Assembly: GCA_002269645.1 (NCBI GenBank)
Contig: NIVC01002726.1
Span: 1-23,084, forward strand
DNA length: 23,084 nt
From: Macrostomum lignano
Taxonomy: Eukaryota
Direction: 5' to 3'
Shown here: positions 1-18,253 of the stretch, piece after piece
Layout: each line of letters opens with the position of its first letter
Numbering within the stretch: the stretch's first letter is position 1
Position numbers and translations under genes: made by a program
Notes under the pieces: generated by a model
Seen by the model: only the letters and a program-made list of their open reading frames with translations
What the model was told of the DNA's origin: nothing
Databases searched by the model: none

Positions 1-525
1 ATGAAACTCTTGTACACTGACACAGACAGTTTTATTATGGACATTTCAAACAGAAGACATTTATCAGGACATGCTGCAGCAAAAAGATTTGTTTGACTTG
101 TCTGAGTGATGATGAATCTTTCAGGACACAGAATGGCGATCAAGTGTTTGACGCCACTAACAAGAAAGTGATTGGGAAAATGAAGGACGAGATTGCTGGT
201 GACATAATCACTGAATTCATTGGTTGAGAGCAAAGTCCTATTTTGTAAAATGTGAGTCGTCAGACCCAATTAAAAAATCAAAGGGAATTCCAAAACGCGT
301 GGTTAGGAAGGAAATTAATGAAGCTGAATACAGAGACGCCTTGAATTGCAACAAAAAGACATCACATGAGTTCTCAAAGCTACAATCCAAAAACCATATT
401 ATTCACACAATTCAGCAAAAAAAGATTGGACTGTCAGGTGCAGATAATAAAGATTCATTTTTGATGACAATATTAACAGTCTACCGTTCGGGCACTGGAG
501 ATTAGGTTTAGGAGATTGGGTTTAG
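1..525 (+). pseudogene. polB: Protein-primed family B DNA polymerase, C-terminal part, 4 frameshifts as given (5' end outside the window)
   Basis: Frame-corrected reading: MKLLYTDTDSFIMD/IQTEDIYQDM...FDLSE/DDESF...NKKVIGKMKDEIAGDIITEFIG/LRAKSY...KGIPKRVVRKEI...KKIGLSGADNK/RFIFDDNINSLPFGHWR, stop 523-525. Contains the catalytic YxDTDS motif and the GKMKDE, LRxKSY and KG motifs. Shifts near 46, 107, 222 and 447. Confidence 0.93.
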
Positions 526-578
526 GAGGTTGAGATTAGGTTTAGGTTTAAGAGAAAGTTTAATAAACCTCATAAAAA

Positions 579-979
579 ATGACAAAAAATAACTTTCTTG
601 AAGATTTGGCTAACGAACTGGAAATCCCAAACTTAGAGGAATATTTATGAGGGACACTCTGCCTGATTTTCCTCTAAGAAAAGGAATGCGGCATCATGAA
701 TTTTGACACCACCGATAAGCCAGGATCTCATTGGGTTTGCTGGGTGATTGATCCGATCGCAAGCACAAGTGTTATTACTTCGATAGCTATGGACGGCAGT
801 ACCAGAAGAGCTAAGAAATTATATGAAGGGAAAAAATAATAAAAAAATTTATCGCTCAGACTTTATTCTCCAAGGTCTTAGCAGTGATATTTTGCGGTGA
901 GCTGTGCATGACTGTTTTGTATGCAATGACCAAAACACGAAAGACCTACAAGGAAATTATTCTTGGCTGTGTTTCATAA
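579..979 (+). pseudogene. Adenain/Ulp1-like cysteine maturation protease, about 133 aa after correcting 5 frameshifts; not in the ORF track
   Basis: Corrected reading: MTKNNFLEDLANELEIPN/RGIFMRDTLPDFPLR/ECGIMNFDTTDKPGSHWVCW.../KCYYFDSYG/AVPEELRNYM...FILQGLSSDI/CGELCMTVLYAM...CVS*. Catalytic H (GSHW), D (FDSYG), Q and C (CG) are in the expected order. Shifts near 633, 680, 762, 794 and 892. Confidence 0.9.
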
Positions 980-1688
980 GGGTTCATTGTGAATTTCTTT
1001 GCCGACTTTCTTTCCACATAATGTTGAAGAACTTTCTCGAGTTCATTTCTCAGCTGACTCATGTCATCAGTTACCGACCATGTTCAAGTTCATTCGAATT
1101 GTTTGTTCATAAAGATCCTGAATGGTTTTGAACTCATCCTCTGAAATGAACTTATCCTCGATTGCCCTTGAAATGTACCCTATGATTGAAGTGTGCACCC
1201 CTTTCTCTTTTACTTGCTTCTCCTGTAGCTGCTTTAGTTTTTTCGCCTGTTTCGCCTAATGCTCCAGTAATTGCTGAAATAAGTCCACATGCAGCACCCA
1301 CAGAGCCGAGTGGGATTGCGATTGGGGCTGTGATGACTGGCAACGTTGAGACAGCCGCAGCAGATCCAGATAGAACAGACACAGATCCTAGAATCATATT
1401 GCTGTAGTCGAAAAATTTACAGTGGCTGTTATAGCGCTTAATTTTCTTTGTGTTGTGGAAAATATTTTTTTCAAGATCATCTCGCATTTTTTTAATCTCC
1501 ACCAGTCGAAACTGTTGAGAGTTACAAGTAATGACGGGGTAGAGTTTTTGTTGCTCATATTGAGGTGCATTCAGATTCGGTGCATTCAGGCTTTGTGTGT
1601 TCGAATTCGGTGCCATTGGGTTTGGTGCTGTCGGTATTTTAGGTTCAGCGTATTGAGACTGATCGTATAGAGAATTTTGTTGGGCCAT
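946..1688 (-). CDS. Viral membrane-hairpin protein, about 246 aa after correcting 2 frameshifts, with PTAP and LYPVI motifs
   Basis: ATG at 1688 preceded by an A-run. Hydrophobic hairpin MILGSVSVLSGSAAAV...PLGSVGAACGLISAITGAL. After a shift near 1255 it continues KQAKKLKQLQEKQVKEKGVHTSIIGYISRAIEDKFISEDEFKTIQDLY, and after a shift near 1078 SVTDDMSQLRNELEKVLQHY...PRIISL*. Confidence 0.7.
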
Positions 1689-1779
1689 TTTTTTCTCTAG
1701 AAAAAATAAAAAAAATATAAAACTATCCGGTTTGAAGATCTGTTTTCTTTTTGATAATTCCATCTGCACCGCCGGTTGT

Positions 1780-2589
1780 CTAGGCGGCTCTCGTGACGCC
1801 GGAGGATCGCGAGTCCAGCAGGCAGCGGCTGGGCGGCTGACGTTTGAGAGCGTGCCGGATTACTCCGGCGGGGTCCAGAGCTCCTTCTACTCGATCTGTA
1901 GACATGACCGGACGAGCAGTAGATTCTGCTTCATCAATAGCAATATCACGAAGATTGAGTGTTCTCTCCAGACGATCAAGCCTCCTTATTATTTTACCCC
2001 AAGAGCTATACATTCCGTTTAGATAGCTACTGTGTGATACATCCTTTCTCTTTAATGCTTCAAGTCTTTCTTTGATTCGATCATGCAACGCTGTTGACTG
2101 GTTCATGAACTCTTCTAAATTATTTACTTTACCTGTGTTGGTTGCGACGTTTTCTTTAATTCTATCATGCAACGCTGTTGACTGGTTCATGAACTCTTCT
2201 AAATTATTTACTTTAGCTGTGTTTGTGAAAACTCCTCCTTCAAGAATACGCATCCGTCTATCAGTGGAATTTCCCAGAAGATTAACTGTCGATCTTAAGC
2301 CGTTGATTAGCGAGACTATCGAAGTTATTTCTGACCTTAGTTCATTAGTTGCGTTTAACAACGGCACATAAAGCTTATCACTTTCAAACTTCTGCCTAGC
2401 TACTTTAAGCCTGAGATCTTCCATGTTTATTTGCAACTGGTGCATGGAGCGCTCTAGGGCTTTCAGTCTGTTTTTATTCAGTTTGATCTCTGGGATCTCT
2501 TCATCAGTGTTAATGTAGCGCTTGTCAAGGAAGGAAGTTGTGAGAGTGCTGTTGCCTGTAGTTGACTCACCAGCAAAATTAATAGACAT
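1780..2589 (-). CDS. Coiled-coil viral protein (269 aa), possibly a fibre or spike, with an internal 28-aa duplication
   Basis: Intact ORF with A-run ATG context, heptad-rich middle and two copies of TNT(A/G)KVNNLEEFMNQSTALHDRIKE. Function is inferred only; the GC-rich C-terminal ~40 aa may be out of frame. Confidence 0.7.
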   Translation of the reverse strand: MSINFAGESTTGNSTLTTSFLDKRYINTDEEIPEIKLNKNRLKALERSMHQLQINMEDLRLKVARQKFESDKLYVPLLNATNELRSEITSIVSLINGLRSTVNLLGNSTDRRMRILEGGVFTNTAKVNNLEEFMNQSTALHDRIKENVATNTGKVNNLEEFMNQSTALHDRIKERLEALKRKDVSHSSYLNGMYSSWGKIIRRLDRLERTLNLRDIAIDEAESTARPVMSTDRVEGALDPAGVIRHALKRQPPSRCLLDSRSSGVTRAA

Positions 2590-2605
2590 TTTTTTAAATG
2601 AAAAA

Positions 2606-3406
2606 TTAAAGTAAAATTCTTTTCTCCTTATTAATCATGACAAACTGATAGGGTTGGTTCCACTTTTCATAGCATATGTTAACAAATTCCTCCTGTGATA
2701 TTGTTCTGTTAGAGTTCTTAGCTGGATATGTAATGTGAGCTGGGGCAATGACCTCATTATAAAATCGTTTCAGTCGATCCTGTGGTATGGTTGGGAAAAG
2801 GAGAATCAAATTACAGTTACCTCTAATTGTTTTATTTGGCAGTTCAAACCAGTTTTGGGCAATGTAAATAACATTGCAATTATTATGTCTACCCCGGGTG
2901 AAATAATTTTCTATCTGTTTCTGGGGACCGGTCATGCAGTCATCGAAGACAATCAGGTGCTTTCTCCCCTTTTCTAGTTCATCAGGTTGAGGTAAGAGTT
3001 TAGTTTTAGGATCTATCTGTGGATCTCCATAAGTGAAAACTTTAATGTTTTGCCATTTTTCATTGTCTGGGATGTGCTTTGCGTATTCAGTGGCTACAAC
3101 TTCCGGGTTGCTGTTGAGGTCTTTTTGATGTCTAAAACATTGAATAATATCTTCCTTGTTGAGTTTGTTCTGTAGGCCCGCTACTAGCATTTTATACTCA
3201 TCTTGATACAGAGTGGGTGAATAGATATGTAGTGTGTCATAATCGAGGAATCCAGGTCTGAGGAGCATGTTAAAAACTCTGAAGGTTTTCCCTGACCCAG
3301 ATGAGCCAACAACAATGCATCGGAAGTGCCCTGGAATTATCTCGTTGTGAGCAAATTTTATCTGATTGCGTGTCCAGTGGGGATGAAAGTCGTTTGTGAA
3401 GTCCAT
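2606..3406 (-). CDS. A32/FtsK-HerA-type DNA packaging ATPase (266 aa)
   Basis: Walker A GSSGSGKT, Walker B LIVFDD, and TRGRHNNCNVIYIAQ (Arg finger plus conserved Gln) followed by IRGN. ORF intact. Confidence 0.95.
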   Translation of the reverse strand: MDFTNDFHPHWTRNQIKFAHNEIIPGHFRCIVVGSSGSGKTFRVFNMLLRPGFLDYDTLHIYSPTLYQDEYKMLVAGLQNKLNKEDIIQCFRHQKDLNSNPEVVATEYAKHIPDNEKWQNIKVFTYGDPQIDPKTKLLPQPDELEKGRKHLIVFDDCMTGPQKQIENYFTRGRHNNCNVIYIAQNWFELPNKTIRGNCNLILLFPTIPQDRLKRFYNEVIAPAHITYPAKNSNRTISQEEFVNICYEKWNQPYQFVMINKEKRILL

Positions 3407-3560
3407 TTTTTATGTAAAAAAACTTTTTCTTTTTAAACTTGTGTATTTAAGACGCGTGTGTCTTTTTTCGGGATGTGTATGTGTGTGTCTTTTTTCGACT
3501 AGTCCTACATCCGACTAGTCCTACACCCTCACACCTCTTTTACCGTCAGGGTGCACCAAA

Positions 3561-3939
3561 TTAGTCAAATTTAAAACCGCCTCCTTTCTTATATTCAGCT
3601 CTCATCTTTGCGTAGATGGCTGGATCGACACTATCTGCACTCGGTGCAAGGGGTTGAATATCTGGTATTGATTTCCGGGTTTCATGAACCGTATCTTTAA
3701 TCTTTTTGGCTGCTGTGACTACACTGCCGGCCGCTTCGGCAACGTTCTTGATGTTCTCTTTGTTCTCTCCAATGACCTTAAAAATCTTGGCCCCCTGAGC
3801 GATCAAATCGGCAGGGCCATTCCCAGAGCGTTCTTTTCTTGGATAGTGGCCTGCAGGGAAAAGTCCAGATCCGCGTTTAATGAGATTAAGTTCCTCTTTG
3901 TCATAGTATTTGTCAATGTCTTTTTCGAAAATAAGGCAT
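3561..3939 (-). CDS. Small virion core or membrane-lytic (protein VI-like) precursor, about 125 aa after one frameshift correction
   Basis: AAAAATG at 3939 (MPYF). After a shift near 3925 it reads DIDKYYDKEELNLIKRGSGLFPAGHYPRKERSGNGPADLIAQGAKIFKVIGENKENIKNVAEAAGSVVTAAKKIKD...KKGGGFKFD*, joining the 81-aa ORF of the track. Confidence 0.65.
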
Positions 3940-3955
3940 TTTTACTTGAAATAAA

Positions 3956-5169
3956 TTATTTTTTGTTGAACCGCGAAAGCAGAAGCTCTCTCGCCCTCTT
4001 ATCGATGTATTTTCTCTCAAGCATTTTATTGAGGATGTGAACGAACTCTTTTCTATTCTATCTTTCATTCCGGTCTTTGCCGCTCCTAGAAGAACCGCTA
4101 CTCGCTTGTAGAATTCAGGCATGCCTTTTCCGGAAGAGCTTGGTGGTGATTCGAATGATTGGTCAGAGAAGGATGTTCCTGGTGAGGGTTGCTGTAGCCT
4201 AGGTGTGAATACTCTGTCATTGATTCGCTTCATTCGTTCTGGGGAGAACTGTTCTAATTGTCGCCATTCATCTGGGCGCTGGTTTCTGTACTGGGAAATC
4301 TCATTTGGCCCTGCTTTTTCAAGCGCTTCTAGTACTTGTTCGGGTGTGATTTGTTGCTGTGGCGGTGGAGGTTGTTGTGGTTGTGGTTGCTGCTGTTGTG
4401 GTTGTTGTAGTTGTTGTTTTGGTTGCTGCTGTTGTGGTTGCTGCTGTTGTGGTTGTGGTTGTTGTGGTGGTTGTTGTGTTGGTTGTCTTATGACCTCTTC
4501 TTGATCCGGCAAACCAAACCATTGTTTAAAGTATTTGTATTTTTTAAAATTGTTCAAGACAATCCCTTTTTCATGTAAAATTTTCAAAACACCGTTGTTC
4601 TTGAGCATATCTATGTCCCTATCGAGAGCAAAGGTAACAAGATCTTTGTAATTTTTTAGCTGCTTCTCGGATCTTTTTTTCTGATTTTTAGTCATGTAAT
4701 CAAGTAAAGTTTGAGTGAAGGGGATTCGTTTAGTTTCTGCGCCTTTATTGATTGAAATAGTTTCCTTTGTCACTTCAATGTTGTAATCCGCCGGTTCCCC
4801 GGTAATATTTTTTCGCCAGGCACTAATTCCAAAAATATATTTTCCATCATCCAATACGGGGCCAAAAAAGTTATCCTTCACATTCATCTGCACTGGTTGT
4901 CCTGGTTGCTGAGCCTGTGGTTGTCCCGGTGAAGATGGGATTTTACCCAATGTGTTTTGCAAGTGGCTCTCTTGAATATCATCAACTGCTTCCTTCACAG
5001 TGTCGAGGTTTTTCTTCGCTTCTGTGTATCCGGGTTTGTGAAATTCGGTGGCTGCTTGGACGAATTCATTGTAAGATTGTTGTTCTTTGTTGATTAGCCC
5101 TGTAACTCTCTTTTCTGCCTGCGCCAGCTTTTCTAGTTCAGAGATATGATATGAACTTTTCCGCTTCAT
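3956..5169 (-). CDS. Polinton-associated protein with a polyQ/P tract; true C-terminus in another frame
   Basis: Long ORF with DNFFGPVLDDGKYIFG and a C-terminal GKGMPEFYKRVAVLLGAAKTG. Adding one A near 4050 gives EKEFVHILNKMLERKYIDKRARELLLSRFNKK* (stop 3956-3958), which leaves the next gene's start free. Confidence 0.75.
4352..4486 (-). repeat. Imperfect CAA/CAG/CCA trinucleotide tract encoding QQPPQQPQPQQQQPQQQQPKQQLQQPQQQQPQPQQPPPPQQQ
   Basis: Directly visible (gtt/gct/ggt)n run on the plus strand. Confidence 0.95.
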
Positions 5170-5197
5170 TTTTAAATATTTTTTCTTTTGTTGAAAA

Positions 5198-6489
5198 ATG
5201 AACGATCCCCTGACACCGGTTTTCTACAAAATTAACAAGCCTATTTTGAGTGATGATAGCACAATCAAAGCGACTCAGGTAAGAGTTCCCAGTCAGGAAA
5301 ATCAGAATGAAACTAATTTGGGTCCAGGTCAAACACTGACATTTACATACAATGGATGTTCGTCTTTGGTTAGTGTGCACAGTCTAAGGAGCGGCTTCTA
5401 TATGACGTATCAATTCAAAACTAAAGGAGGCGCAGACGCCGCTCATGCAAATGATGATCTACACAATGCGGATGTCGCACTAACCAGTAATTTCTGGGCT
5501 TATATGTTCAAAGAGTTTAATGTGTCCAATGGAAGTACAGAATTGGAAAGAATAGCAAACTTTGGTGTGGTCTATGATACCCAGTGCTTGATTGAGAACC
5601 CGGATTTTATTCAGATGGGGAGCGGTGCTGGATTCATCCCCAATGAACAGACAGGAGATGAGAATGACCCTGGTTACAAAAAGAGAAAGGAGAGATACAA
5701 CTATGCTCTTGTTGGTGAGAACGATGCTGCTAAGAATCCGCTGTTTAGGTCTGTAGATATTTTTGTACCTTTGAGGTTTATGAGTGGTCTCTGTAATAGT
5801 TTCAATCGGTTGACAAGCAACTTTAGCTACACATTTAGACTGACTAGAGATGATCGGAACAGAGGAATTTGGTCGGGGGCCAATCATACATCGATGGAGA
5901 TTAAGCCAACTAGCGTGGAGCTGTACTTAGAAATTATTGAGCCCAAGACTGCACTCAAAGCTGAATACTTGAAGGCGATTGAGAAAGACATTGATGTTGC
6001 TACAGCTTATATGTGCAGAGATGAGCGGAATGACGCAAGACACAATATTTGCATTAAAGAAGGCTCCTGTAGCAATCCAAGGTACATTATTGTCACTATG
6101 AGGAATACAACTAATGTAGGTAGATATCTACATGGAAACATTCGATCGATTCAACATGAGATCAGTGACAATTTATACCCTGCATTGCCACAAAATGGGA
6201 ATTTCTCGGAGAACAAGATTAGTAAGTTTTACAATGAACTGTCGGACTTGGCTGTCAAAGAGAATAACGGTATTGTTTTGACAACCTTGCAGTATAAAAA
6301 CTATATCCAATATTTGGTGTTGATGTGACTGCTAGACAAATGCCTACAGACAATAGCCCTGTTAACATTGTGACTAATATCGAGTGGAAAGAATTTGGTG
6401 CCGCAACGGCTGTTGATCTGTTTATTATCTATGCATTTGAGAGGAAAATCAAGGTTAATATGATCAATAACTCGTCTAGTAAAGTTTGA
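5198..6489 (+). CDS. Major capsid protein (double jelly-roll, Polinton PY type), about 430 aa after one frameshift correction
   Basis: 376-aa ORF with a beta-rich pattern (IFVPLRFMSG, FRLTR, PTSVELYL, NPRYIIV, LYPALP). Adding one A in the run at 6296-6300 extends it YKKLYPIFGVDVTARQ...DLFIIYAFERKIKV...SKV* (stop 6487-6489). Directly upstream of the minor capsid gene. Confidence 0.85.
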
Positions 6490-6511
6490 ATAATTTTTTT
6501 CAATAAAAAAA

Positions 6512-7369
6512 ATGGAAGCCATAGCCGAAAGACTAAACAACATTGTTTCACACTCTAAGGAGAGCATTCCAATCACTGTAGCGGGTCGCATTACTGAGTC
6601 AAACGGAATCTTCATTCAAAAATTGGAGCAACCACTTCGTTTGGATCCCGAGGCGAATTACCACGTCTATCTCAATGATTTCACTGGGTGGTCAAATGTT
6701 CCCAATGTGACAGCGGAAAATAACAAGTTTTATTACAAATGGAAGCGTACTACAACAGAGGTTGTGATATTTCCTGTCAGCACACAGAGCGTGGATACTT
6801 ATAATTACTTCTTGGAGAAAGTCTTCACTAAACGAAAGCATTTTGAGATACCGGATGAAAGCAAACCAGAAAATAAACTGTTCCCTGTTAGATTAACTTA
6901 TGATCTAACTGTCATGAGAGTTATCTTGCAAGTTCATAAGGACGCAGAGGTAGAGTTTAAAGATGGCACTTGGTATCGCGAGTTGGGATTTGAAAAGAGA
7001 GTTTATGGTGGCGCCACAGACCAAAGCCCGCTGCAGGCGCCTGGCACTGTTGCTGTGTCCCGGCTAATATCCGGTATGTACTTGGCGCCAAATATCGCTG
7101 ACATTGTCAAAGGTTTGAATATATTAATTCGTAGCAATCTGAGCCATGATTGGATATTCAAAGGCAAACGAACCAACATACTTTTTAACATTTCAAACTC
7201 TGTTGCTGGTGGCAAAATGCTTGTGCAAAAGCCGAACCCCGTGAAAAGAGTGATTCTGAGTAATAGAGAGATACATGAAATCGTTCTGCAGTTTGAAACA
7301 GAGGATGGAGTTGGTGTCGATTTTAACGGGGAAGAGTTTGTGCTAACAATTGTTATAGAGAGAATGTGA
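6512..7369 (+). CDS. Minor capsid protein (penton, single jelly-roll), 285 aa
   Basis: N-terminal LEQPLRLD...YHVYL...WSNVPNVTAENNKFYY and C-terminal ILIRSNL...KGKRTNILF...P...IHEIVLQFETEDGVGVDFNGEEFVLTIVI patterns typical of Polinton minor capsid proteins. Intact ORF. Confidence 0.87.
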   Translation: MEAIAERLNNIVSHSKESIPITVAGRITESNGIFIQKLEQPLRLDPEANYHVYLNDFTGWSNVPNVTAENNKFYYKWKRTTTEVVIFPVSTQSVDTYNYFLEKVFTKRKHFEIPDESKPENKLFPVRLTYDLTVMRVILQVHKDAEVEFKDGTWYRELGFEKRVYGGATDQSPLQAPGTVAVSRLISGMYLAPNIADIVKGLNILIRSNLSHDWIFKGKRTNILFNISNSVAGGKMLVQKPNPVKRVILSNREIHEIVLQFETEDGVGVDFNGEEFVLTIVIERM

Positions 7370-7430
7370 GTCGTCTTCAGATTTATAAAATTACGATATA
7401 AACCGCTAGGTACAACCTTGTAGTTGCCAA

Positions 7431-7670
7431 CTACAACTGCCTTATAACTTCTGCAAAGTTATAGTAGCTGTCGTAATCTTTTACGTAGGTTACTCCATAC
7501 TTATGAAACCAGTGTCTTTGGAGAGCTAGATTAATATTAGGGACATTGATATCAATGCCGGGCCAATATTTTCTCATGTACTCGCTGCATTCTAGTTTGC
7601 ATTGGTATTTGGATTTGTACAATGGATTAGGCTGAGTATAATAAGAACCTGGAGAGACAACTGGAAACAT
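7431..7670 (-). CDS. Small Tyr-rich viral ORF of unknown function (79 aa)
   Basis: Shares the TTTT-N4-AAAAATG start context of the other viral genes and is convergent with the minor capsid gene. Confidence 0.5.
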   Translation of the reverse strand: MFPVVSPGSYYTQPNPLYKSKYQCKLECSEYMRKYWPGIDINVPNINLALQRHWFHKYGVTYVKDYDSYYNFAEVIRQL

Positions 7671-7699
7671 TTTTAGAGAAAATTTAGATTTTTTTCAAA

Positions 7700-8124
7700 G
7701 GGTGAGCACCCTGCGCTGAGGGTTTAAAGTCTTTGGGATCTGGTTTCGCTTTGCAAATTGAATGTGGGGAGAAGAATGCAGATTATTTTCTGATTGTTTC
7801 GAACATGCTATGGGTGGATGTCAGTGGATTATGTAGGACACTTGTTATGCTCTGATAATATAGATGTATTTTGGGGGATAGGTTAGGAGGATTATGGATG
7901 ACGTTTTCGGAGCTGCTATGCTCAGAATAACAGTAGGACACCGGTTGTGCTCTGATTCTGTCGGGGATAATACGGATGGATTTAATGGGATTATGTTCGA
8001 AGTTTTCGGAGCAAGGGCGACCCCCCTTTTTTTCTGATTCTGTCGGGGATAATATGGATGGATTTAATGGGATTATGGAGGACGTGAAAAATTTTGCACC
8101 AGAAGCCCCCTCATGCATTCTACT
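7700..8124. repeat. Probable right terminal inverted repeat region of the Polinton, with a 45-bp subterminal direct repeat
   Basis: Non-coding. 7951-7995 and 8033-8077 are 44/45 identical. Inward-reading end is AGTAGAATGCATGAGGGGGCTTC. The partner TIR is not in the window, so the inner limit is unknown. Confidence 0.55.
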
Positions 8125-8287
8125 GAAGGGGGTTCGATAACTGGACAGCCGCTAACTAACCGCGACTAACTCTGCTTAACTTGCAAGCAGGCGGCGGACG
8201 AACTTTCACATTGCAAGCTCTGAGAACCCTGCTACTCCAAGAGTCAGGCGCGTCATACATGCAGATCCCCGACAGAGTGGCGCTCAC

Positions 8288-8446
8288 CTGCGCTCCGTCA
8301 ATGCAGCAGGTGGCCAGCAGGTTGGGGCCCAGCCGGCTCCAGTCCTGCGAGCTGATGCTGCGCGAGTGGCCGCGCAGGCTGGCCAGGCAGGCGGGCGAGG
8401 AGCCGCCGCTGGCGCCGCAGTCGAACACCTGGCAGACATTGTTGCG
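8288..8446 (-). CDS. WDR59: Host WDR59-like gene, coding exon 3 (53 codons, phase 0 to 0)
   Basis: Pyrimidine tract plus ctgcag acceptor (AG 8448-8447) and CAG|GTGAGC donor. Peptide RNNVCQVFDCG...LRGHSRSISSQDWSRLGPNLLATCCIDGAQ resembles the recalled human WDR59 segment SNQRVDLYKW...LQGHTRVISDLDWAVFEPDLLVTSSVD. Confidence 0.82.
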
Positions 8447-8480
8447 CTGCAGTTGGGGCGGCGGGAGGGAGGTTTATAGG

Positions 8481-9360
8481 GATCTCTAATGGGAGATTAA
8501 TATCTGGGTAATGAGATCTCTAATGGGAGATTAATATCTGGGTAATGAGATCTCTAATGGGAGATTAATATCTGGGTAATGAGATCTCTAATGGGAGATT
8601 AATATCTGGGTAATGAGATCTCTAATGGGAGATTAATATCTGGGTAATGAGATCTCTAATGGGAGATTAATATCTGGGTAATGAGATCTCTAATGGGAGA
8701 TTAATATCTGGGTAATGAGATCTCTAATGGGAGATTAATATCTGGGTAATGAGATCTCTAATGGGAGATTAATATCTGGGTAATGAGATCTCTAATGGGA
8801 GATCAACACCTGGATTATGGGATATGTAATGGGAGATCAACACCTGGATTATGGGATCTGTAATTGGAGATTAACATTTGGATGATGGGATCTGTAATTA
8901 GCGATTAACACTTGGATGATGGGATCTGTAATTGAAGATTATTATCTGGGTAATGGGATCTTTTACCTGGATAATGAGATCTCTAATGGGAGATTGACAC
9001 GTAGATGATAGGATCTTTAATTTGAGATTAACACCTGGATGATGGGATCTCTAATTGTAGATTAACACCTCGACGGTGGGATCTCTAATTGGAGATTAAC
9101 ACCTGGATGATAGGATATTTAATGGGAGATTAACACCTGGATGATGGGATCTCTAATGGGAGACTAACACCTGGATGATGGGATCTCTAATTGGAGATTA
9201 ACACCTGGATGATGGGATCTCTAATGGGAGACTAACACCTGGATGATGGGATCTCTAATTGGAGATTAACACCTGGATGATGGGATCTCTAATTGGAGAT
9301 TAACACCTGGATGATGGGATCTCTAATTGGAGATCAACACCTGCATGATGGGATCTACAA
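8481..9360. repeat. 34-bp minisatellite in WDR59-like intron 2, about 26 units
   Basis: Unit GGGAGATTAATATCTGGGTAATGAGATCTCTAAT starting at 8491, 8525, 8559 and so on. About 9 identical copies to ~8800, then the variant GGGAGATTAACACCTGGATGATGGGATCTCTAAT. Confidence 0.95.
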
Positions 9361-9502
9361 TAAGTGATATACCTGGATGATGATTGCTACATGATAAATA
9401 AGTTAAAAAAAGTAATTTGACTTTGACAATGATGCAACTAATGGATGAGCACAGTGAGCAGGGCAGTCACGTGACTAAAGCCAATGAGCTAATCGAACTC
9501 AC

Positions 9503-9641
9503 AGCCGCCATGAACAGCTTGGAGCTGCTGGCATCCTGCAGCTTCTGCCAGACGGCGCAGTGCACGTCCCATTTGGTGTCGCCTTGGATTCGCTTGACAA
9601 TTTGCTGATCATCAAAATCGTAGAGGACAATCTCTCGCTTG
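9503..9641 (-). CDS. WDR59: Host WDR59-like gene, coding exon 2 (139 bp, phase 2 to 0)
   Basis: ccgcag acceptor and GCT|GTGAGT donor. Peptide (C)KREIVLYDFDDQQIVKRIQGDTKWDVHCAVWQK...KLFMAA parallels recalled human GRRFLYIVNLD...RKISRQSKWDIGAVQW...YFAAS. Phases match both neighbours. Confidence 0.82.
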
Positions 9642-9731
9642 CTGCGGTTGTTCAGGGGGAGTTAATATAAAAACCTGTCTGTCAGCAGGCAGCCAGCCAA
9701 TGTAATGCTAATACAATCTAAAGTCTCTTAC

Positions 9732-9838
9732 CATCCTAAAATAGCCAATTTTCCCGATGAGTCAACAGACACTGATGACGAGTTTGACAGGCTGACAGAT
9801 GTAAGTTCAATGCATTTTGTGGCTAGGTAACTGTCCAT
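9732..9838 (-). CDS. WDR59: Host WDR59-like gene, first coding exon (107 bp)
   Basis: ATG at 9838. MDSYLATKCIELTSVSLSNSSSVSVDSSGKLAILG plus TG|GTAAG donor. SVSVDSSGKLAILG parallels recalled human AMSVDCLGQHAVLSG; split codon TG+C gives Cys across a 90-bp intron. Confidence 0.78.
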
Positions 9839-10328: not shown

Positions 10329-10969
10329 AGGAAGGACAATGCCTAAAAATTTTCTTTGGTATACAAGCTGGTGGCACTTAAGTGAGGCTCTTCACAGCAA
10401 TTATCCATAGAAGATAATATAAAAAACTTTAAAAAAATTGTATCACTTGCTTTGGTACATAATAATATATATAGAAAAGCTATAGTCTTAAGTTAAAGTA
10501 TGTATAATGCATATAAGAAGACTTAAAAATTTTATACCCTATGCTATAATATAGTGATTTCATTTGCTATTCAAACAATTTTTCTGGCAGATAAATAAAT
10601 TGTGAGTCCCAGTTCCATAGTTCTGGCCTATTGTAAATTACAATATACTTATATAAATAAAAACTAACATAATTTACTTCTTTGAGTAGTTGATATACAA
10701 ATAGTATGCTATAACCTTGCATTACTTTTATACTTTATTTATATGTATACAATATAATAAATAATAATAATAGTTGTGCAAATCATAAGACTTAAGAATC
10801 TGCTGAATTATATAAGTCATATATAGATATGTATACTAGCAATCTTCGCCCCCCGATGGGGGACATCTGGATAGAATCTCTGTTCTCTACAAGTAACAAA
10901 AAAACAGCCAAAAATCCTTCAAAAAGACAACAGACAAACTGCTCAAATGAAGTGCATTGCAAAAAGAAA

Positions 10970-11393
10970 TCATCCCAAGACCGCAAGCATCCCCCAGATA
11001 GCAAGCATCCCCCAGATAGCAAGCATCCCCAAGATAGCAAGCATCCCCAGATAGCAAGCATCCCCAAGATAGCAAGCATCCCCCAGATAGCAAGCGTCCC
11101 CCAGATAGCAAGCATCCCCCAGATAGCAAGCATCCCTCAGATAGCAAGCATCCCCCAGATTTCAAGCATCCCCCAGATAGCAAGCATCCCCCGGATAGCA
11201 AGCATTCCCCAGAGAGCAAGCATCCCCCAGATAGCAAGCATCCCTCAGATAGCAAGCATCCCCCAGATAGCAAGCATCCCCCAGATAGCAAGCATCCCTC
11301 AGATAGCAAGCATCCCCCAGATAGCAAGCATCCCCCAGATAGCAAGCATCCCCCAGATAGCAAGCATCCCCAAGATAGCAAGCATCCACCAGA
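10970..11393. repeat. 18-bp tandem repeat, about 23 units
   Basis: Unit CCCCCAGATAGCAAGCAT, with one 17-bp unit near 11045. Confidence 0.95.
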
Positions 11394-11477
11394 CAATAAG
11401 TAGCTAGTGCGACAATTTCCTTAGCATTATAGCGGCTCCTTTAAAATTCGCTTACTTTTACGTTTGAAATTGTGTAT

Positions 11478-14378
11478 CTTTTATGTTTAACAGGGTGGCT
11501 CTTTTATGTTATACATTGTGGCTCTTTTATGTTATACATTGTGGCTCTTTTTTGTTCTACGCTCGTACATGGTAACTCTTTTATGTTTGATACGGTGGCT
11601 TTTCAATGTCTGACATGGTGGCTCTTCTATGTTTGACATGGGGGCTCTTCTATGTTTGACATGGGAGCTCTTCTATGTTTGACAAAGTGGCTTTTTAATG
11701 TTTGACATGGTGGCTCTATTATGTTTGACATGGTGGCTCTATTATGTTTGACATGGTGGCTCTTTAATGTTCAAAAAGTTGGCTCTTTTATGTTTGACAT
11801 GGTGGCTCTTTAATGTTTGACATGGTGGCTCTTTAATGTTTGACATGGTGGCTCTTTAATGTTAGACAAAGTAGCTCTTTAATGTTTGACATGATGGCTC
11901 TTAAATGTTAGACATGGGGGCTCTTTACTTTTTGACATGGTGGCTCTTTAATGTTGGACATGGTGGCCTTTAATGTTAGACATGGTGGCTCTTTAATGTT
12001 CGACATAAAGTCACTTATATGTTTGACATGGTGGCTCTTTAATGTTTGACATGGTGGCTCTTTTATGTTCGACATGGTGTCGCTTCAATGTTCGACATGG
12101 AGTTACGTATATGTTTTACATGGTGACTCTTTTATGTTCGACATGGTGGCTCTTTAATGTTTGACATGGGGTCTCTTCAATGTTTGACATGGAGTTACGT
12201 ATATGTTTGACATGGTGGCTCTTTAATGTTTTACATGGTGGCACTTTCATGTTTGACCTGGTGGCTCTTTAATATTTGACATGTTGGCTCTTTTATGTTT
12301 GACATGGTGGCTCTTTTATCTTTGACATGGTGGCTCTGTAATGTTCGACATGGAGTCATGTATATGTTTCACATGGTAGCTCTTAAATGTTCGACATGGT
12401 GGCTCTTTAATGTTCAACATGGAGTCATGTATATGTTTGACATGGTGGCTCTTAAATGTTCGACATAGTGGCTCTATAATGTTTGACATGGTGGCTCTTT
12501 AATGTTCGACATGGCGTCATGTATATGTTTGACATGGTAGCTCTTGAATGTTCAACATGGAGTCATGTATATGTTTGACATGGTGGCTCTTAAATGTTCG
12601 ACATGGTGGCTCTTTAATGTTTGACATAGTGTCTCTTTACTGTTTGACATGGAGTCATGTATATGTTTGACATGGTGGTTCTTTAATGTTAGACATGGTG
12701 GCTCTTTTATGTTTTGCATGGTGGCTCTTTTATGTTCGACATGGTGTCTCTTCAATGTTTGACATGGCGTCATGTATATGTTTGACATGGATGCTCTTGT
12801 ATTTTTAACATGTTGACTCTTTAATTTTCGAAATGGTGGCTCTTAATTGTCTAACATGGAGTCACGTATATGTTTGACATGGAGTCATGCATATGCCTGA
12901 TATGGTAGCTCTTTAATGTTTTACATGGAGTCACGTATATGTTTCACATGTTGGGTATTTTATGTTTGACATGGTGGTTCTTAAATGTTCGACATGGTGG
13001 CTCTTTAATGTTTTACATGGTGGCACTTTCATGTTTGACCTGGTGGCTCTTTAATGTTTGACATGGTGGCTCTTTAATATTTGACATGGTGGCCCTTTTA
13101 TGTTCGACATGGTGGCTCTTCAATGTTTGACATGGAGTCACGTATATGTTTTACATGGTGGCTCTTTTATGTTCGACATGGCGTCATGTATATGTTTGAC
13201 ATGGTAGCTCTTGAATGTTCAACATGGAGTCATGCATATGTTTGACATGGTAGCTCTTGAATGTTCAACATGGAGTCATGTATATGTTTGACATGGTGGC
13301 TCTTAAATGTTCGACATGGTGGCTCTTTAATGTTAGACATAGTGTCTCTTTAATGTTTTGCATGGTGGCTCTTTTATGTTCGACATGGTGTCTCTTCAAT
13401 GTTTGACATGGAGTCATGTATATGTTTGACATGGTGGCTCTTGTATTTTTAACATGTTGGCTCTTTAATGTTCGACATGGTGGCTCTTTAATGTCTAACA
13501 TGGAGTCACGTATATGTTTGACATGGAGTCATGTATATGTCTGATATGGTAGCTCTTTAATGTTTTACATGAAGTCACGTATATGTTTCACATGGTGGCT
13601 ATTTTATGTTTGACATGGTGGTTCTTAAATGTTCGACATGGTGGCTCTTTAATGTGTTACATGGTGGCACTTTCATGTTTGACCTGGTGGCTCTTTAATG
13701 TTTGACATAGTGTCTCTTTAATGTTTGACATGGAGTCATGTATATGTTTGACATGGTAGCTCTTGAATGTTCGACATAGAGTCATGTATATGTCTGCCAT
13801 GGTGGCTCTTTAATGTTAGACATGGTGGCACTTTCATGTTTGACCTGGTGGCTCTTTAATGTTTGACATGGTGGCTCTTTAATATTTGACATGGTGGCCC
13901 TTTAATATTTGACATGGTGGCCCTTTAATGTTCGACATGGTGGCTCTTCAATGTTCGACATGGAGTCATGTATATGTTTGACCTGGTTGCTCTTTAATGT
14001 TTGACATGGTGGCTCTTTAATGTTCGACATGGTGGCTCTTTTAGGGTTGAAATGGTGGCTCTTTAATGTTTGACATGGTGGCTTTTTAATGTTCGACATG
14101 GTGGCTCTTTTATGTTCGACATGGCGTCATGTATATGTTTGACATGGTAGCTCTTGAATGTTCAACATGGAGTCATGTATATGTTGGACGTGGTGGCTCT
14201 TTAATGTTCGACATGGTGGCTCTTTAATGGTTGACATGGTGGCTCTTTAATGTTCGACATGGTAGCTCTTTAATGTTCGACATGGTGGCTCTTTAATGGT
14301 CGACATGGTGGCTCTTTAATGGTCGACATGGTGGCTCTTTAATGTTTGACATGGTGGCTCTTTAATGTTTGACATTGT
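11478..14378. repeat. 23-bp satellite array, about 125 units, two main monomer types with higher-order structure
   Basis: GACATGGTGGCTCTTTAATGTTT (catgg at 11821 and 11844) and variant GACATGGAGTCATGTATATGTTT. Confidence 0.96.
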
Positions 14379-14421
14379 GCTTTTTTGTGTTTAGCATTTT
14401 GTGTTTTTAAGATTTTTGAAT

Positions 14422-14505
14422 AAAAAAATCTTTTTGCACTACTAAGATTCGAACCCAGGTCGTAGCATTAGCAGTCCAGTCTGTTCGCATCTATGCTATC
14501 TCTTG
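14422..14505 (-). pseudogene. tRNA-derived Pol III unit (tRNA-Ser(GCT)-like arm) inside the Helitron
   Basis: A-box-like TAGCATAGATG (14498-14488), TGGACTGCTAAT, B-box GGTTCGAATC (14455-14446) and a T7 run (14428-14422). Stems are degenerate. Confidence 0.55.
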
Positions 14506-16047
14506 TCTTGAATTGTGGCCCTTATAATTTAATTTTTATAGCAAATCGGTTAGAGTAAAAAGTTATGACATAATCAATTTCTCAGTCAGCCAGTATCAGT
14601 GTCAATTTAAGTTAGCAATATTGTTACACAATTTAAATCAAGTTTTGTGTGCATTTGTTCGGCACTGTTTTCAACTGGTTGTGATGTAATCTTTATCACA
14701 ATTGGAATTCAGTCAGTCAGTTTTTTCTCTAGCATTCTTACAATGCATTTCAGGTCGAAAGAGCTGCTTGACCTTTGCAAAAAAGCATGTTTTTCGAATA
14801 TTTAATCCCTTTAAAATTGAGCAATTTCTTAGCCAAGATGCATGTACCGTCCCAGGAAAATTTCTGATCGAATGGTGCAAGTTTGAAGAAAATCGATTGA
14901 GCCATTTTTTCTGAAATCTATCGCATACCTACCTACCTACCCACAGACAACTCATTTTTAGTATATAGGACAAACACATATGTATACACTTTATAATGCA
15001 AATTTTATTATAAAACATCTGAAAATAAATTTAAACATTAGAAAAGGCCCATTAAGACTTTAACTCTATTCAGAGATCTGAGTACTATAACTTAATATAT
15101 ACTATGTAGCTTATAGGCCAGAAAAAATTCATGGTATAAGTATTAATAGATTAGCTGATACATACTATACATATATCAGCATCTATACATACATAAATAC
15201 TATACAATGAGATGGAAGGCCTCACTTAGTTCAATAGATATGATGGCAGCAAAGAGTTTGTGCTGCTCTGCGTGTGTATTTATATAATTACAAACAGTGT
15301 GAGATTGAGGGGCCTAGGGAGGTGCAAAAAAGTAGCGTGGCATGATAGGCTACACCAACCCCCCTTCCTGGCTTAGCGAGCTGGCTAGCTTGGTGTGCAC
15401 CTACCCCACCTCAGCTAGACAGAGGTTGGGGGGTTTCCAGTGTGACTGCACTGGTGCTGCCGGTTGCATATAGTCTGGCTGCCACAACAAACAAAAATAG
15501 ATAAAAAGGTGGCAAATGGGCAATCTCCCAGTTTAATACATTAAATTATTTGCAATTTTTAATTAAGTCATTATGAGGTCATGATAAATATCAAGCAAGC
15601 AAGTCAATAAGTCAGAAAGTCAATTAAGCAAGTCAATAATAGTGTGCCACCTAGTAGTTAAAGTACTAAGACATATCCAATCATGGCCTTGTTTGTACTA
15701 TGCTTGACTATGTTTAGCACCTAATGGCCCTCACAATAAACACCTTGGTGAGGTGATACTTTCAATGAAAGAACTTATTAATAGATTTATCTATCTCTAT
15801 CCCACTTCTAAGGCTACCAAGCTTTATGGGATAGTTGAGCAAATACTGACAGTGACAGCAAATATCATAACAATTTTGTTTAGTCTATGGCAGTCTAATA
15901 GGATAGTCAATGTAATACTTATTATTCAATCTGGTATATAGGTATATTGTATGCCTAGAGATAGACAAAATCTAGCAACTAGGTGATAATTAGATAGGTG
16001 TAAAGAAGCTGCACTTTCTAATGGCCTTTTAATATCCTACAGGTAAG

Positions 16048-16540
16048 ACTAGACTAACTAATGCCAGGGGTGTGGGGGTGGCCAGCCCCCCACTAGACCA
16101 TTAAACTAACTAATGCCAGGGGCATGGGGGGCAGCGAGCCCCCCACTATTTTATTAGAGGCAGGGGGTTGTGTGCACCCTGGCGCACTTTAAGCGACATT
16201 GGCACACAACTGGCGAGAGGCATTACTGCCCATTCCACCGACTCCCCTGAGTAGGCATATAAGCACATGGATATGTATGCAGGAGTGTACAGTGGCCCTA
16301 ACTTTATATTATTGTTAGGCATGTACACTTCACTGCGCCTTGGGGGTTGGCTCTCAAGGCCATTAATTGCACGATCAAAGCCAAGCCGAGATTCCAATTC
16401 AGCCCCAAATTAATGTGACTGCACTTGGAATCGAGCCTGGGTCACTAGCACACCAGAGCAGCTGCGCTACCACTGGGCTATGCCCCCCTTGCCCCCCACT
16501 ATACCACTAGACTAACTAATGCAAGGGGTGTAGGGGGGCT
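16048..16540. repeat. Three ~50-bp GC-hairpin units (ACTAACTAATGCCAGGGG...GGGGG...AGCCCCCCACTA) interrupted by a SINE
   Basis: Units at 16048-16096, 16105-16148 and (partial) 16506-16540. Confidence 0.7.
16150..16490 (-). mobile_element. tRNA-derived SINE (~340 bp) with a 12-bp target-site duplication
   Basis: Head GGGGGCATAGCCCAGTGGTAGCGC...GGCTCGATTCC (A box and variant B box), ends in CTAATAAA, flanked by GCCCCCCACTAT at 16138-16149 and 16491-16502. Confidence 0.75.
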
Positions 16541-16999
16541 TTTTAGCTCTTAATTTGGGTGAAACACATAGGTCATAGCTATAAAAGATAAAAACACAAT
16601 ATAACCATCATCCCGTCTTTGAAGACAATAGCATCTTCATTCACTAGTTAATGAAGACAGTCTTTTTGCCCCAGTGAGCTTTGGGTTGGAATTTTGTAAT
16701 ACCTAATGTTGTATCAATTATTTAGAGACTTCCAAGTTCCAAGTCATTATTAACACTGATGCTCCTAATATTTTGTGTCATGACTCATGTCATACATAAA
16801 GTTAGCCTAATAGATAAATAAGGTGAGTGTTGCAATTTTACATATACATTTGGTATTAACCTCTTCTAAATAGAAGAGGATTTTATTCATCTCCATTCCA
16901 GTTGGATGGTAAACAGCACTTACCATAGACTATTCCCTTTAGCAGAATGGTTTGCTAAGTCTATGGCTATTCTAATCTAATAAAAAGACATTGACTAAG

Positions 17000-18253
17000 A
17001 ATAAGGCCAAAAACTAAGAACGAGTACTGGAGCACAGACAGTTACTATAGTGCTCTGTACTTTCAAGCACCTCAAGCTCTCTCTAGAGACTGCTTCAAGC
17101 AGCTACTTGGTCTGCTCCATTTCTACGATTGCGCTAAGAATCTAATTGTCAATGATCCTCTCTTTAAGATCCATCCATTGCTGCAGGCTTTGAGAGATGC
17201 TTGCATTAATGTGTATAGGCCTAAGGAGGATATGAGCATGGATAAGTCTTTGGTGTTGTACAAAGGTCACCTGCGCTTCAAACAATATATTCCAACAAAG
17301 CAGGCTAAGTATGGAATAAAGCTATATTGTGCATGTGAGGCCAAATCAGGCTACCTGTACAACTTCTGCATTCACTTAACCCCAGAGGAGAACCACTGGT
17401 TTGATGAACAGTTGCAGGGAGACAATCCGTCCTTTAGTGAGAAGATTGTTATTGAGCTCTGCTACAACTAGCTGCACCAAGGCTACTGCATCTTTGTCAA
17501 CAAATGGTTTGGTTCCTATTGGCTGTCAGAGTACTTGCTCACTCAAGGAATGCACCTGACTTGTACTATCTGGGCCAACCAAGGTATGCCAATTGAGCTC
17601 AGACAGCTGCACATTCCACCTAATGATGTCACCTTCATGCACAAAGATAGGATGCTAGCTGTCAAGATTGTTGAACAAAAGGAGAGTGGCCTGAAGACTC
17701 TATATTTGCTAGACACAAATGAGGTGACTGAGAGTGTTCAAACCAGATGCACGGTTTGTAAAGGAGCAGAAACAGTGGTGCAGAAGAGCAGATCAGTTCT
17801 CACCTATTATTGGTGCATGGGTGGTGTTGACAGAATGGACAGTCATCTACAGCCTCATCTGCCAGGGAGGAAAACTATGTAAGTGGTTTTTTAAGCTTGG
17901 CTTGCACCTATTTCTTCAAATGATTCATAACACTTGGATTATGTATAGCTGGTGCAATGGAGAGAAAACATTTGCCAAGTTTCTTAGGCCAGCATTTGGT
18001 AGCTGGTGGAGCATACCAGAAGGAGCGAGCAGGAAGCACCCAGTCACTGCCATCCAAGCCACTCCAGGTGGCCAAGTCAGTCCACACTTTCTAATGAAGA
18101 TTGTGGTGTGGGACAGTAAGCCAAGACCCAACAAAGGACTGCCATGTCTGCTACAGAGCTGGAAGCAGCAAGTGCATGGTCTATTGCTTTCCTGAGTGTC
18201 CAGGGGAACCAGGGCTCTGCTTGGAAGCCTGTTTTCAGCAATGGCATACCTGA
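17000..18253 (+). pseudogene. piggyBac (PGBD4-like) transposase fossil
   Basis: EYWSTD...LSRDCFKQLLGLLHF...DPLFKIHPLL...MSMDKSLVLYKGHLRFKQYIPTKQAKYGIKLY...SGYLYNF; FVNKWF; MGGVDRMDSHL...KWFFKL; C-terminal CHVCY...ECPGEPGLCLEACFQQWHT*. Stops at 17469 and 17880, frameshifts, and the second catalytic Asp reads Asn. TIRs not found. Confidence 0.9.

What the first reader, a model, noticed from the sequence alone, without database searches (positions are those of the whole stretch)
7700..9838. The virus sits 163 bp inside intron 3 of a WDR59-like (GATOR2) gene
Three phase-compatible exons splice to an open 135-aa WD40 N-terminus. No further exon (expected xxWD...GASQV-like) is visible before position 1, so intron 3 contains the whole Polinton or the gene is truncated by it. 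WDR59/Sea3 is a GATOR2/SEACAT subunit regulating TORC1 (established). The five-gene viral block, including the ATPase and both membrane proteins, is co-oriented with host transcription, so host read-through could express viral genes or yield a truncated or chimeric WDR59.
Basis: partly seen in the sequence, partly recalled or inferred. Interest (0 to 1): 0.78.

Follow-up and report, generated by a model that had tools for sequence, protein, structure and literature searches.

The report
Polinton provirus inside flatworm WDR59 intron
A complete 16.7-kb Polinton/Maverick-type virus-like element sits inside a normally 192-bp intron of one WDR59 gene copy of the flatworm Macrostomum lignano; it is a clean, recent integration but an ordinary kind of event.

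Summary
Three GT-AG exons on the minus strand (9838-9732, 9641-9503, 8446-8288) join into an open 135-aa peptide. It is 135/135 identical to the start of an annotated 1211-aa Macrostomum lignano protein, whose best solved-structure match is human WDR59 (E 6.5e-72). The element ends at 8124, 163 bp into intron 3.

Intron 3 holds the whole element: 16,718 bp, 401-bp inverted ends 99% alike, AG...CT tips, and a 6-bp target duplication (CCCTTC). Exon 4 follows 30 bp after the far end, and the annotated coding sequence runs on to its RING finger. A virus-free paralogue has a 192-bp intron 3 with a single CCCTTC.

The element encodes a protein-primed-type PolB, rve integrase, A32 ATPase, a double-jelly-roll-like capsid protein, an adenain-like protease, PLA2 and a pX-like protein. 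That makes it a Polinton of the adintovirus kind.

Effects on the host gene, or on viral expression, are untested. Plain intron retention meets a stop codon before the virus, so it cannot give an in-frame fusion. This is a new member of a known kind, of modest interest.

The parts
9732..9838 (-). WDR59-like gene, exon 1 (ATG at 9838; 107 nt)
   Evidence: GT donor at 9731-9730; joined frame open; identical to P0196 residues 1-35
9503..9641 (-). WDR59-like gene, exon 2 (139 nt)
   Evidence: AG acceptor and GT donor; identical to P0196; carries the copy-specific Ala65 (Thr in the paralogue)
8447..9502 (-). Intron 2 (1056 bp) with a 34-bp minisatellite at 8481-9356
   Evidence: Tandem Repeats Finder, about 26 copies in two sub-arrays; the same intron is 398 bp in paralogue L005 and 1664 bp in L006
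8288..8446 (-). WDR59-like gene, exon 3 (159 nt, phase 0, WD40 repeat)
   Evidence: Exon peptide 100% identical to residues 84-136 of P0055 in an exhaustive search; Pfam WD40 weak hit
8125..8287 (-). Host part of intron 3 before the element (163 bp). The exon 3 frame, if unspliced, meets a stop codon inside this stretch.
   Evidence: 87% identical to the virus-free paralogue L005 up to exactly 8125; read-through translation
8125..8130 (-). Target-site duplication CCCTTC (GAAGGG on the + strand)
   Evidence: Same hexamer directly after the far end of the element in L006, and present once at the empty site in L005
7723..8124 (.). Terminal inverted repeat of the element (401-402 bp, tip AG on the host-sense strand), with internal 45-59-bp direct repeats
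   Evidence: 99.0-99.3% complementary to L006 28650-29050; internal repeats
1..8124 (.). The part of the Polinton provirus that lies in the window (8.1 of 16.7 kb); the rest lies beyond position 1
   Evidence: 99.2% identical to L006 20481-12333; the whole element is L006 12333-29050
7431..7670 (-). 79-aa ORF, no known family; open in both assemblies
6512..7369 (+). 285-aa protein, conserved in related elements (candidate minor capsid/penton protein, function not shown); open in the window, one frameshift in L006
   Evidence: 37% identical to a 261-aa ORF of related contig L002; no Pfam family; break counts
5198..6462 (+). Double-jelly-roll-like major capsid protein gene; one frameshift, seen in both assemblies
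   Evidence: Pfam DJR-like_dom E 2.9e-4, below cut-off; 42% identical to the L002 431-aa protein, which carries PF21738; break counts
3913..5169 (-). 418-aa protein with a Q/P-rich repeat, unknown function; open in the window, one frameshift in L006
3564..4059 (-). Small conserved protein gene (167 aa in L006); one frameshift in the window, open in L006
   Evidence: Homologous to 130-145-aa ORFs of L001 and L002; bounds and break counts
2606..3406 (-). A32/FtsK-type genome-packaging ATPase, 266 aa; open in both assemblies
   Evidence: Pfam Pox_A32 29.3 bits, cut-off 22.8; 54 relatives, most with PF04665
1780..2589 (-). 269-aa coiled-coil-like protein with an in-frame 84-bp duplication; open in both assemblies
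1152..1769 (-). 205-aa protein with one clearly hydrophobic segment (candidate membrane protein); open in the window, two frameshifts in L006
   Evidence: Kyte-Doolittle 19-residue maximum 1.81; break counts
579..976 (+). Adenain-like cysteine protease gene; one frameshift in the window, open (133 aa) in L006
   Evidence: Pfam Peptidase_C5 21.9 bits, cut-off 21.3, on the L006 ORF; bounds and break counts
1..505 (+). 3' end of the family-B DNA polymerase gene; at least two frameshifts in the window, while the last 418 codons are open in L006
   Evidence: L006 ORF shows the Pol A, B and C motifs; 778 relatives, many with Pfam PF03175 DNA_pol_B_2; break counts

Best explanation
SHOWN. The window comes from the flatworm Macrostomum lignano. 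It holds the first three exons of one paralogue of the WDR59 gene (a GATOR2 subunit). It also holds 8.1 kb of a 16.7-kb Polinton/Maverick provirus of the adintovirus kind. The provirus is integrated in intron 3, 163 bp after the exon 3 donor and 30 bp before the exon 4 acceptor.

SHOWN. The integration has the signature of an rve-type integrase: a 6-bp target duplication, 401-bp inverted ends and AG...CT tips. A paralogous copy of the gene keeps the unoccupied site in a 192-bp intron.

INFERRED. The insertion is younger than the genome duplication that produced the paralogues. The inverted ends differ by 1% or less, while the paralogues differ by dS 0.044.

INFERRED. The element is most likely carried as an intronic passenger and removed with the now 16.9-kb intron:
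- The donor is untouched.
- A CUAAU branch-point-like motif, the pyrimidine tract and the AG acceptor all lie downstream of the element and are also untouched.
- All later exons are open.

Any loss of output from this copy would be buffered by the other paralogue(s).

The confidence given is for the whole statement. The structural part alone is about 0.95 and the 'spliced out and tolerated' part about 0.6.
For: Host gene:
- Exon model and open frame.
- 135/135 identity to PAA75032.1.
- Full protein against human WDR59, E 6.5e-72, and yeast Mtc5, E 1.8e-28; zf-RING_16 at 36.8 bits against a cut-off of 27.4.
- All 1211 residues map onto L006.

Junctions:
- Both junctions, the CCCTTC duplication and the single CCCTTC at the empty site in L005.
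- Homology to L005 stops exactly at 8125.
- Inverted ends of 401 bp at 99%.
- The same junction is present in two assemblies that differ by indels and by a 4.1-kb block.

Element genes:
- A32 ATPase and DJR-like protein.
- rve, PLA2, Adeno_PX, Peptidase_C5 and Endonuclease_7.
- PolB motifs, and relatives carrying PF03175.
- Related metagenomic contigs with the same gene set.

Purifying selection on the two paralogues: dN/dS 0.23.
Against: - No expression data were available, so splicing across the 16.9-kb intron is inferred from intact signals and an intact downstream CDS only. The public CDS is translated from the genome and does not prove a copy-specific transcript.
- The host-sense strand of the element carries 20 poly(A)-like hexamers in the 8.1 kb seen here. 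These could end transcripts early, although such consensus matches are weak evidence.
- The dN/dS value mostly reflects time before the insertion.
- The two assemblies may share raw reads, so they are not proven to be independent.
Confidence: 0.8

Rival explanations
1. The insertion cripples this WDR59 copy. Transcripts end or mis-splice inside the 16.7-kb element and give at most a truncated N-terminal WD40 fragment. The animal tolerates this because the other paralogue(s) supply WDR59.
For: - The intron grew from about 192 bp to 16,911 bp.
- There are many poly(A)-like hexamers on the host-sense strand.
- Five co-oriented viral genes presumably carry their own 3'-end signals.
- An intact virus-free paralogue exists.
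- M. lignano has three paralogous subgenomes (PMC10733133).
Against: - Donor, branch-point-like motif, pyrimidine tract and acceptor are intact.
- All downstream exons are still open and 97% identical to the paralogue.
- If the insertion is very young, decay would not yet show, so this argument is weak.
Confidence: 0.25
2. Host transcription through intron 3 expresses the co-oriented viral genes, or makes a chimeric WDR59-virus protein.
For: ORFs 1152-5169 and 7431-7670 are on the host-sense strand, and several are open.
Against: - The exon 3 frame meets a stop inside the host part of the intron, before the element, so intron retention gives no fusion.
- The first large genes met by a read-through transcript (capsid genes 5198-7369) are antisense to it.
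- Internal ORFs of an unspliced pre-mRNA are not normally translated (established knowledge).
- The deposited annotation lists no gene inside the element in L006.
Confidence: 0.08
3. The host-virus junction is an assembly artefact (a chimeric contig).
For: The genome is a repeat-rich neopolyploid that is hard to assemble (PMC10733133). The two assemblies differ by many homopolymer indels.
Against: - Both junctions are present, with a perfect 6-bp duplication of a hexamer that is single at the paralogous empty site.
- The host sequence resumes exactly where it left off, 24 bp before exon 4. A misjoin would not create this.
- The same junction occurs in the window and in NIVC01000907.1.
Confidence: 0.02

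Closest known systems
[quoted passage not shown] 2007, as summarised in PMC10748475)
   Same: - Size 16.7 kb (range 13-25 kb).
- 401-bp terminal inverted repeats (range 100-1500 bp).
- 6-bp target duplication (range 5-8 bp).
- Protein-primed-type PolB, rve integrase, A32-type ATPase, adenain-like protease and a double-jelly-roll-like capsid gene.
   Different: - Not described for Macrostomum in the held literature.
- The PolB region carries an Endonuclease VII/HNH-superfamily domain.
- The closest protein relatives, all from unannotated metagenome or animal contigs, are at most 77% identical for the ATPase and 47% for the PolB part.
Adintoviruses (proposed animal-tropic family; Starrett et al. 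2021, PMC8502044)
   Same: - Animal host.
- PolB, rve integrase and adenovirus-like virion genes.
- A parvovirus-VP1-like PLA2 domain and an adenovirus pX-like domain, both named as adintovirus hallmarks in that paper.
   Different: - PLA2 and the pX-like domain lie in two separate ORFs on opposite strands here, not in one fused PLA2X gene.
- No phylogeny was made, so the Alpha/Beta class is not assigned.
- This copy is integrated, and no free form is known.
Human WDR59 / yeast Sea3 (Mtc5), subunit of GATOR2/SEACAT
   Same: N-terminal WD40 propeller collinear from residue 17/18, central matches and a C-terminal RING. It is the best hit among all solved structures.
   Different: 1211 aa against 974 aa, with long low-complexity inserts. 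No RWD domain was detected by Pfam at E 0.001. Its function in flatworms is untested.

Membership tests
WDR59/Sea3 (GATOR2 subunit) | N-terminal WD40 beta-propeller collinear with WDR59 | tested here: met
   135-aa peptide: 7uhy_D E 3.7e-7, residues 18-132 against 17-127. Full protein: residues 18-341 against 17-326.
WDR59/Sea3 (GATOR2 subunit) | C-terminal WDR59/RTC1-type RING zinc finger | tested here: met
   Pfam zf-RING_16 36.8 bits against cut-off 27.4 at residues 1159-1207 of P0196. It lies outside the window, in the same gene in L006.
WDR59/Sea3 (GATOR2 subunit) | WDR59 is the best match, ahead of the paralogous GATOR2 WD40-RING proteins (WDR24, MIOS) | tested here: met
   WDR59 E 6.5e-72 and Mtc5 E 1.8e-28, against WDR24 E 3e-11 for the RING region only.
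WDR59/Sea3 (GATOR2 subunit) | Central RWD domain | tested here: inconclusive
   No RWD family among the Pfam hits at E 0.001 or better. phmmer does give four matched stretches along WDR59.
WDR59/Sea3 (GATOR2 subunit) | Assembly into GATOR2 and regulation of TORC1 | not testable with these tools
   Biochemical property.
Polinton/Maverick | Protein-primed-type family B DNA polymerase | tested here: met
   Pol A, B and C motifs are visible in the L006 ORF. There are 778 relatives, many with PF03175 and some named DNA polymerase. Direct Pfam and PDB searches of the ORF gave nothing.
Polinton/Maverick | Retrovirus-like (rve) integrase | tested here: met
   PF00665 37.0 bits against cut-off 32.6 on L006 24408-25442. 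It lies outside the window.
Polinton/Maverick | Terminal inverted repeats of 100-1500 bp | tested here: met
   401 bp, 99% complementary.
Polinton/Maverick | Target-site duplication of 5-8 bp (typically 6) | tested here: met
   CCCTTC on both sides, single at the empty paralogous site.
Polinton/Maverick | Virion module: double-jelly-roll major capsid protein, minor capsid protein, A32/FtsK ATPase, adenain-like protease | tested here: met
   ATPase 29.3 bits against 22.8. Protease 21.9 against 21.3. Capsid protein only E 2.9e-4, below the cut-off, but 42% identical to a relative that carries PF21738. The minor capsid protein is inferred from conservation and position only.
Adintovirus (proposed) | PLA2-like and adenovirus pX-like virion accessory domains in an animal-associated PolB+integrase element | tested here: met
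   Phospholip_A2_4 49.8 bits against 23.9; Adeno_PX 30.3 bits against 25. Definition from PMC8502044. Here the two lie in separate ORFs, not in a fused PLA2X.
Adintovirus (proposed) | Placement within the adintovirus PolB and capsid clades | not tested
   No reference sequences were at hand, so no phylogeny was made.

The most novel reading that the evidence does not exclude
The provirus belongs to a young Polinton/adintovirus lineage that is still transcribed in the laboratory flatworm M. lignano, and its position in a transcribed GATOR2 gene affects either viral gene expression or the output of that WDR59 copy. The grounds are inverted ends 99% alike, and most reading frames open in at least one of the two assemblies. 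If true, a tractable animal model would be available for describing the expression and host control of such elements.
Probability: 0.12. Interest if true: 0.55.

Novelty: new member of a known kind. Interest (0 to 1): 0.3.

Why it matters
This is a textbook-clean Polinton integration. Both ends are visible, with a perfect 6-bp duplication and a paralogous empty site. It lies in a model animal whose Polintons are not described in the literature I could search.

It gives three things:
- A dated, precisely bounded insertion, younger than the recent genome duplication.
- A natural test of how a 192-bp intron copes with 16.7 kb of virus-like DNA.
- A pair of near-identical gene copies, with and without the element, whose transcripts can be told apart by copy-specific variants.

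It does not reveal a new kind of element or a new mechanism.

Tried and rejected
- The word-indexed protein search with the 135-aa peptide found nothing.
That search found the M. lignano protein.
- An exact look-up of the window's ATPase found no record.
- Scans of viral contigs with the 285-aa protein and with a repeat from the inverted end found nothing.
- Related contigs L001 and L002 gave no inverted ends to compare.
- Rfam gave no hit in the window.
- Pfam and PDB searches of the PolB ORFs gave no polymerase hit. Identity rests on motifs and on annotated relatives.
- A 12-nt inverted match links the element's subterminal repeat to 8265-8276 in intron 3. I considered whether the element extends to about 8276. 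I rejected this because 8125-8287 is host sequence shared with the virus-free paralogue, and the target duplication sits at 8125-8130.
- I considered that L005 might be an empty allele. I rejected this because its flanks are only about 87-91% identical and dS is 0.044, so it is a paralogue from the genome duplication.
- I considered that the window might be a third paralogue of L006. I rejected this because the host flank is 99.8% identical.
- Structure prediction of the capsid proteins was not run.
Full report
**1. The observation**

On the minus strand the window has an ATG at 9838 and three segments bounded by GT donors and AG acceptors: 9838-9732, 9641-9503 and 8446-8288. They are 107, 139 and 159 nt long. 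Joined as they stand they give 405 nt, an open 135-aa frame. Intron 2 (9502-8447) is filled by a 34-bp minisatellite at 8481-9356. The coordinates of the finding are therefore right.

**2. What the gene is**

The 135-aa peptide matches human WDR59 best among all solved structures (7uhy_D, E 3.7e-7). The match is collinear from the N-terminus, residues 18-132 against 17-127. Yeast Mtc5/Sea3 comes second at E 1.3e-6. Pfam sees only generic WD40 signal.

The word-indexed protein search found nothing, and the exhaustive search would not accept a spliced peptide. So I searched with exon 3 alone. Its top hit, 100% identical over all 53 residues, is residues 84-136 of a 1199-aa protein, P0055.

- P0055 is PAA61397.1 of the flatworm Macrostomum lignano.
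- Its cluster mate P0196 is PAA75032.1, gene Mlig005134g1, 1211 aa. UniRef names it 'WDR59/RTC1-like RING zinc finger domain-containing protein'.
- P0196 matches human WDR59 at E 6.5e-72 in four stretches and Mtc5 at E 1.8e-28. WDR24 matches far more weakly. P0196 also carries Pfam zf-RING_16 above its cut-off.

The gene is the flatworm WDR59 orthologue.

**3. Where the rest of the gene is**

The locus of P0196 (L006, NIVC01000907.1 of assembly GCA_002269645.1) is the same locus as the window in another assembly. Window 1-9382 aligns to L006 20481-11073, and window 14970-23084 aligns to L006 9004-881 at 99.8%. Within the viral part the two are 99.2% identical, and 20 of the 24 indels lie in homopolymer runs.

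In L006:
- Exon 3 is 12011-12169.
- The element is 12333-29050, or 16,718 bp.
- Exon 4 starts at 29081.
- Intron 3 is therefore 163 + 16,718 + 30 = 16,911 bp.
- All 1211 residues of P0196 map onto L006.

**4. The integration signature and the empty site**

Window 7723-8124 recurs inverted at L006 28650-29050. The inverted ends are 401 bp long and 99.0-99.3% alike, with 2 mismatches and 1-2 gaps. On the host-sense strand the element begins with AG and ends with CT. The hexamer CCCTTC directly flanks both ends.

The second M. lignano copy of the gene is Mlig006669g2, locus L005.
- It aligns with the window from 8125 upward at about 87%, and contains nothing of window 1-8124.
- Its intron 3 is 192 bp, with one CCCTTC at the homologous point, 24 bp before the acceptor.

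This is the classical filled-site/empty-site pair with a 6-bp target duplication. It makes a misassembly very unlikely. A 12-nt inverted match between the element's subterminal repeats and 8265-8276 lies in sequence shared with the empty copy, so I take it as chance.

**5. What the element is**

In the window:
- An A32-type packaging ATPase at 2606-3406, minus strand; Pfam 29.3 bits against a cut-off of 22.8.
- A double-jelly-roll-like capsid gene at 5198-6462, plus strand; Pfam E 2.9e-4, and 42% identical to a relative that carries PF21738.
- A conserved 285-aa protein at 6512-7369, plus strand.
- Several ORFs without a family.

Beyond the window, in L006:
- An rve integrase, 37.0 bits against 32.6.
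- A PLA2-like domain, 49.8 against 23.9.
- An adenovirus pX-like domain, 30.3 against 25.
- An adenain-like protease, 21.9 against 21.3.
- An Endonuclease VII-type domain.

A 418-codon ORF whose 3' end is window 1-505 shows the Pol A, B and C motifs of family B polymerases. It has 778 relatives, many carrying PF03175 and found in animal genomes such as sea anemones and a sponge.

Size, inverted ends, target duplication and gene set meet the definition of Polintons/Mavericks given in PMC10748475. PLA2 and pX-like domains are hallmarks of the proposed adintoviruses (PMC8502044), although here they lie in separate ORFs. I found no paper on Polintons or Mavericks in Macrostomum.

**6. State of the viral genes**

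The two assemblies of the same provirus disagree.

| Gene | Window | L006 |
|---|---|---|
| PolB, 3' part (last 418 codons) | at least two frameshifts | open |
| PolB, upstream part | outside the window | at least one frameshift |
| Protease | one frameshift | open |
| 167-aa gene | one frameshift | open |
| 205-aa hydrophobic protein | open | two frameshifts |
| 418-aa protein | open | one frameshift |
| 285-aa protein | open | one frameshift |
| Capsid gene | one frameshift | one frameshift |
| ATPase, 269-aa ORF, 79-aa ORF | open | open |

Most differences are homopolymer indels, so most of these breaks are probably assembly noise. Only the capsid gene's frameshift is seen in both assemblies. 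The true coding state cannot be told from these data.

**7. Age and the paralogues**

M. lignano is a neopolyploid with three paralogous subgenomes (PMC10733133; PMC5704211). The filled and empty copies encode proteins that are 97% identical. Over 1197 codons, dS is 0.044, dN is 0.010 and dN/dS is 0.23. The element's ends differ by 1% or less, which is within assembly noise. I infer that the insertion is younger than the duplication. A third paralogue may exist; none was retrieved.

**8. How it most likely works**

Shown: integration with an integrase-type signature into a short intron, with both splice sites intact and the downstream exons open.

Inferred: the element is removed with the intron. 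The 30 nt between the element and exon 4 keep a CUAAU branch-point-like motif at about -22, the pyrimidine tract and the AG acceptor.

Rivals:
- The enlarged intron, or viral 3'-end signals, reduce or abolish the output of this copy. The host-sense strand has 20 poly(A)-like hexamers in 8.1 kb, which is weak evidence. The other paralogue(s) would buffer the loss.
The exon 3 frame, if unspliced, stops after 43 further codons, inside the host part of the intron. The first large viral genes downstream are antisense. The deposited annotation has no gene inside the element.

Of the five co-oriented ORFs, only one has a clearly hydrophobic segment, so 'both membrane proteins' is only half supported.

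**9. Verdict**

The observation and the main interpretation are correct and are now precisely bounded. The event itself, a Polinton in an intron, is ordinary. The element is a new member of a known kind, in a host where it had not been described. Its consequences for WDR59 or for viral expression need expression data.

Noticed in passing
window 10837-14969: A 4.1-kb block about 1 kb upstream of the WDR59 start codon is absent from the same locus in L006 and from paralogue L005; the flanks join cleanly in L006. It consists largely of an 18-bp tandem array (10983-11393, 23 copies) and a 23-bp satellite (11567-14379, about 122 copies). It could be an assembly collapse, a haplotype difference or a satellite-carrying insertion.
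   Followed up: partly
window 8481-9356 (intron 2): A 34-bp minisatellite fills intron 2. The intron is 1056 bp in the window, 1664 bp in L006 and 398 bp in the virus-free paralogue L005, so the array length is unstable between copies and assemblies.
   Followed up: partly
window 17178-17882 (+): Remnant of a piggyBac-type transposase, split over at least two reading frames (Pfam DDE_Tnp_1_7, E 1.8e-17 and 7e-6). It is also present in L006 and, in part, in L005.
   Followed up: partly
L006 26742-27694 (inside the element, beyond the window): Five copies of a 93-nt repeat, each holding a near-perfect hairpin, lie in a 2.5-kb stretch without long ORFs between the PLA2 gene and the far inverted end. 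This could be a regulatory region or nested small elements.
   Followed up: no
L006 21854-22603 (-), PolB region of the element: An Endonuclease VII (His-Me/HNH superfamily) domain lies just upstream of the polymerase domain, and some PolB relatives carry the same Pfam family. PMC10748475 describes endonuclease domains (HNH in oomycete and nematode, VSR in mollusc and marine nematode) in the pPolB2 class and treats the HNH domain as a lineage marker. Whether this flatworm polymerase belongs to that class was not tested.
   Followed up: partly
window 2067-2223 and 4351-4486: There is an in-frame 84-bp tandem duplication inside the 269-aa viral ORF, and a Q/P-rich 15-36-bp repeat inside the 418-aa viral ORF.
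   Followed up: no
window 8288-9838 (exons 1-3): G+C content rises steeply along the gene's first exons, from 42% to 54% to 72%, while the introns stay near 39-43%.
   Followed up: no
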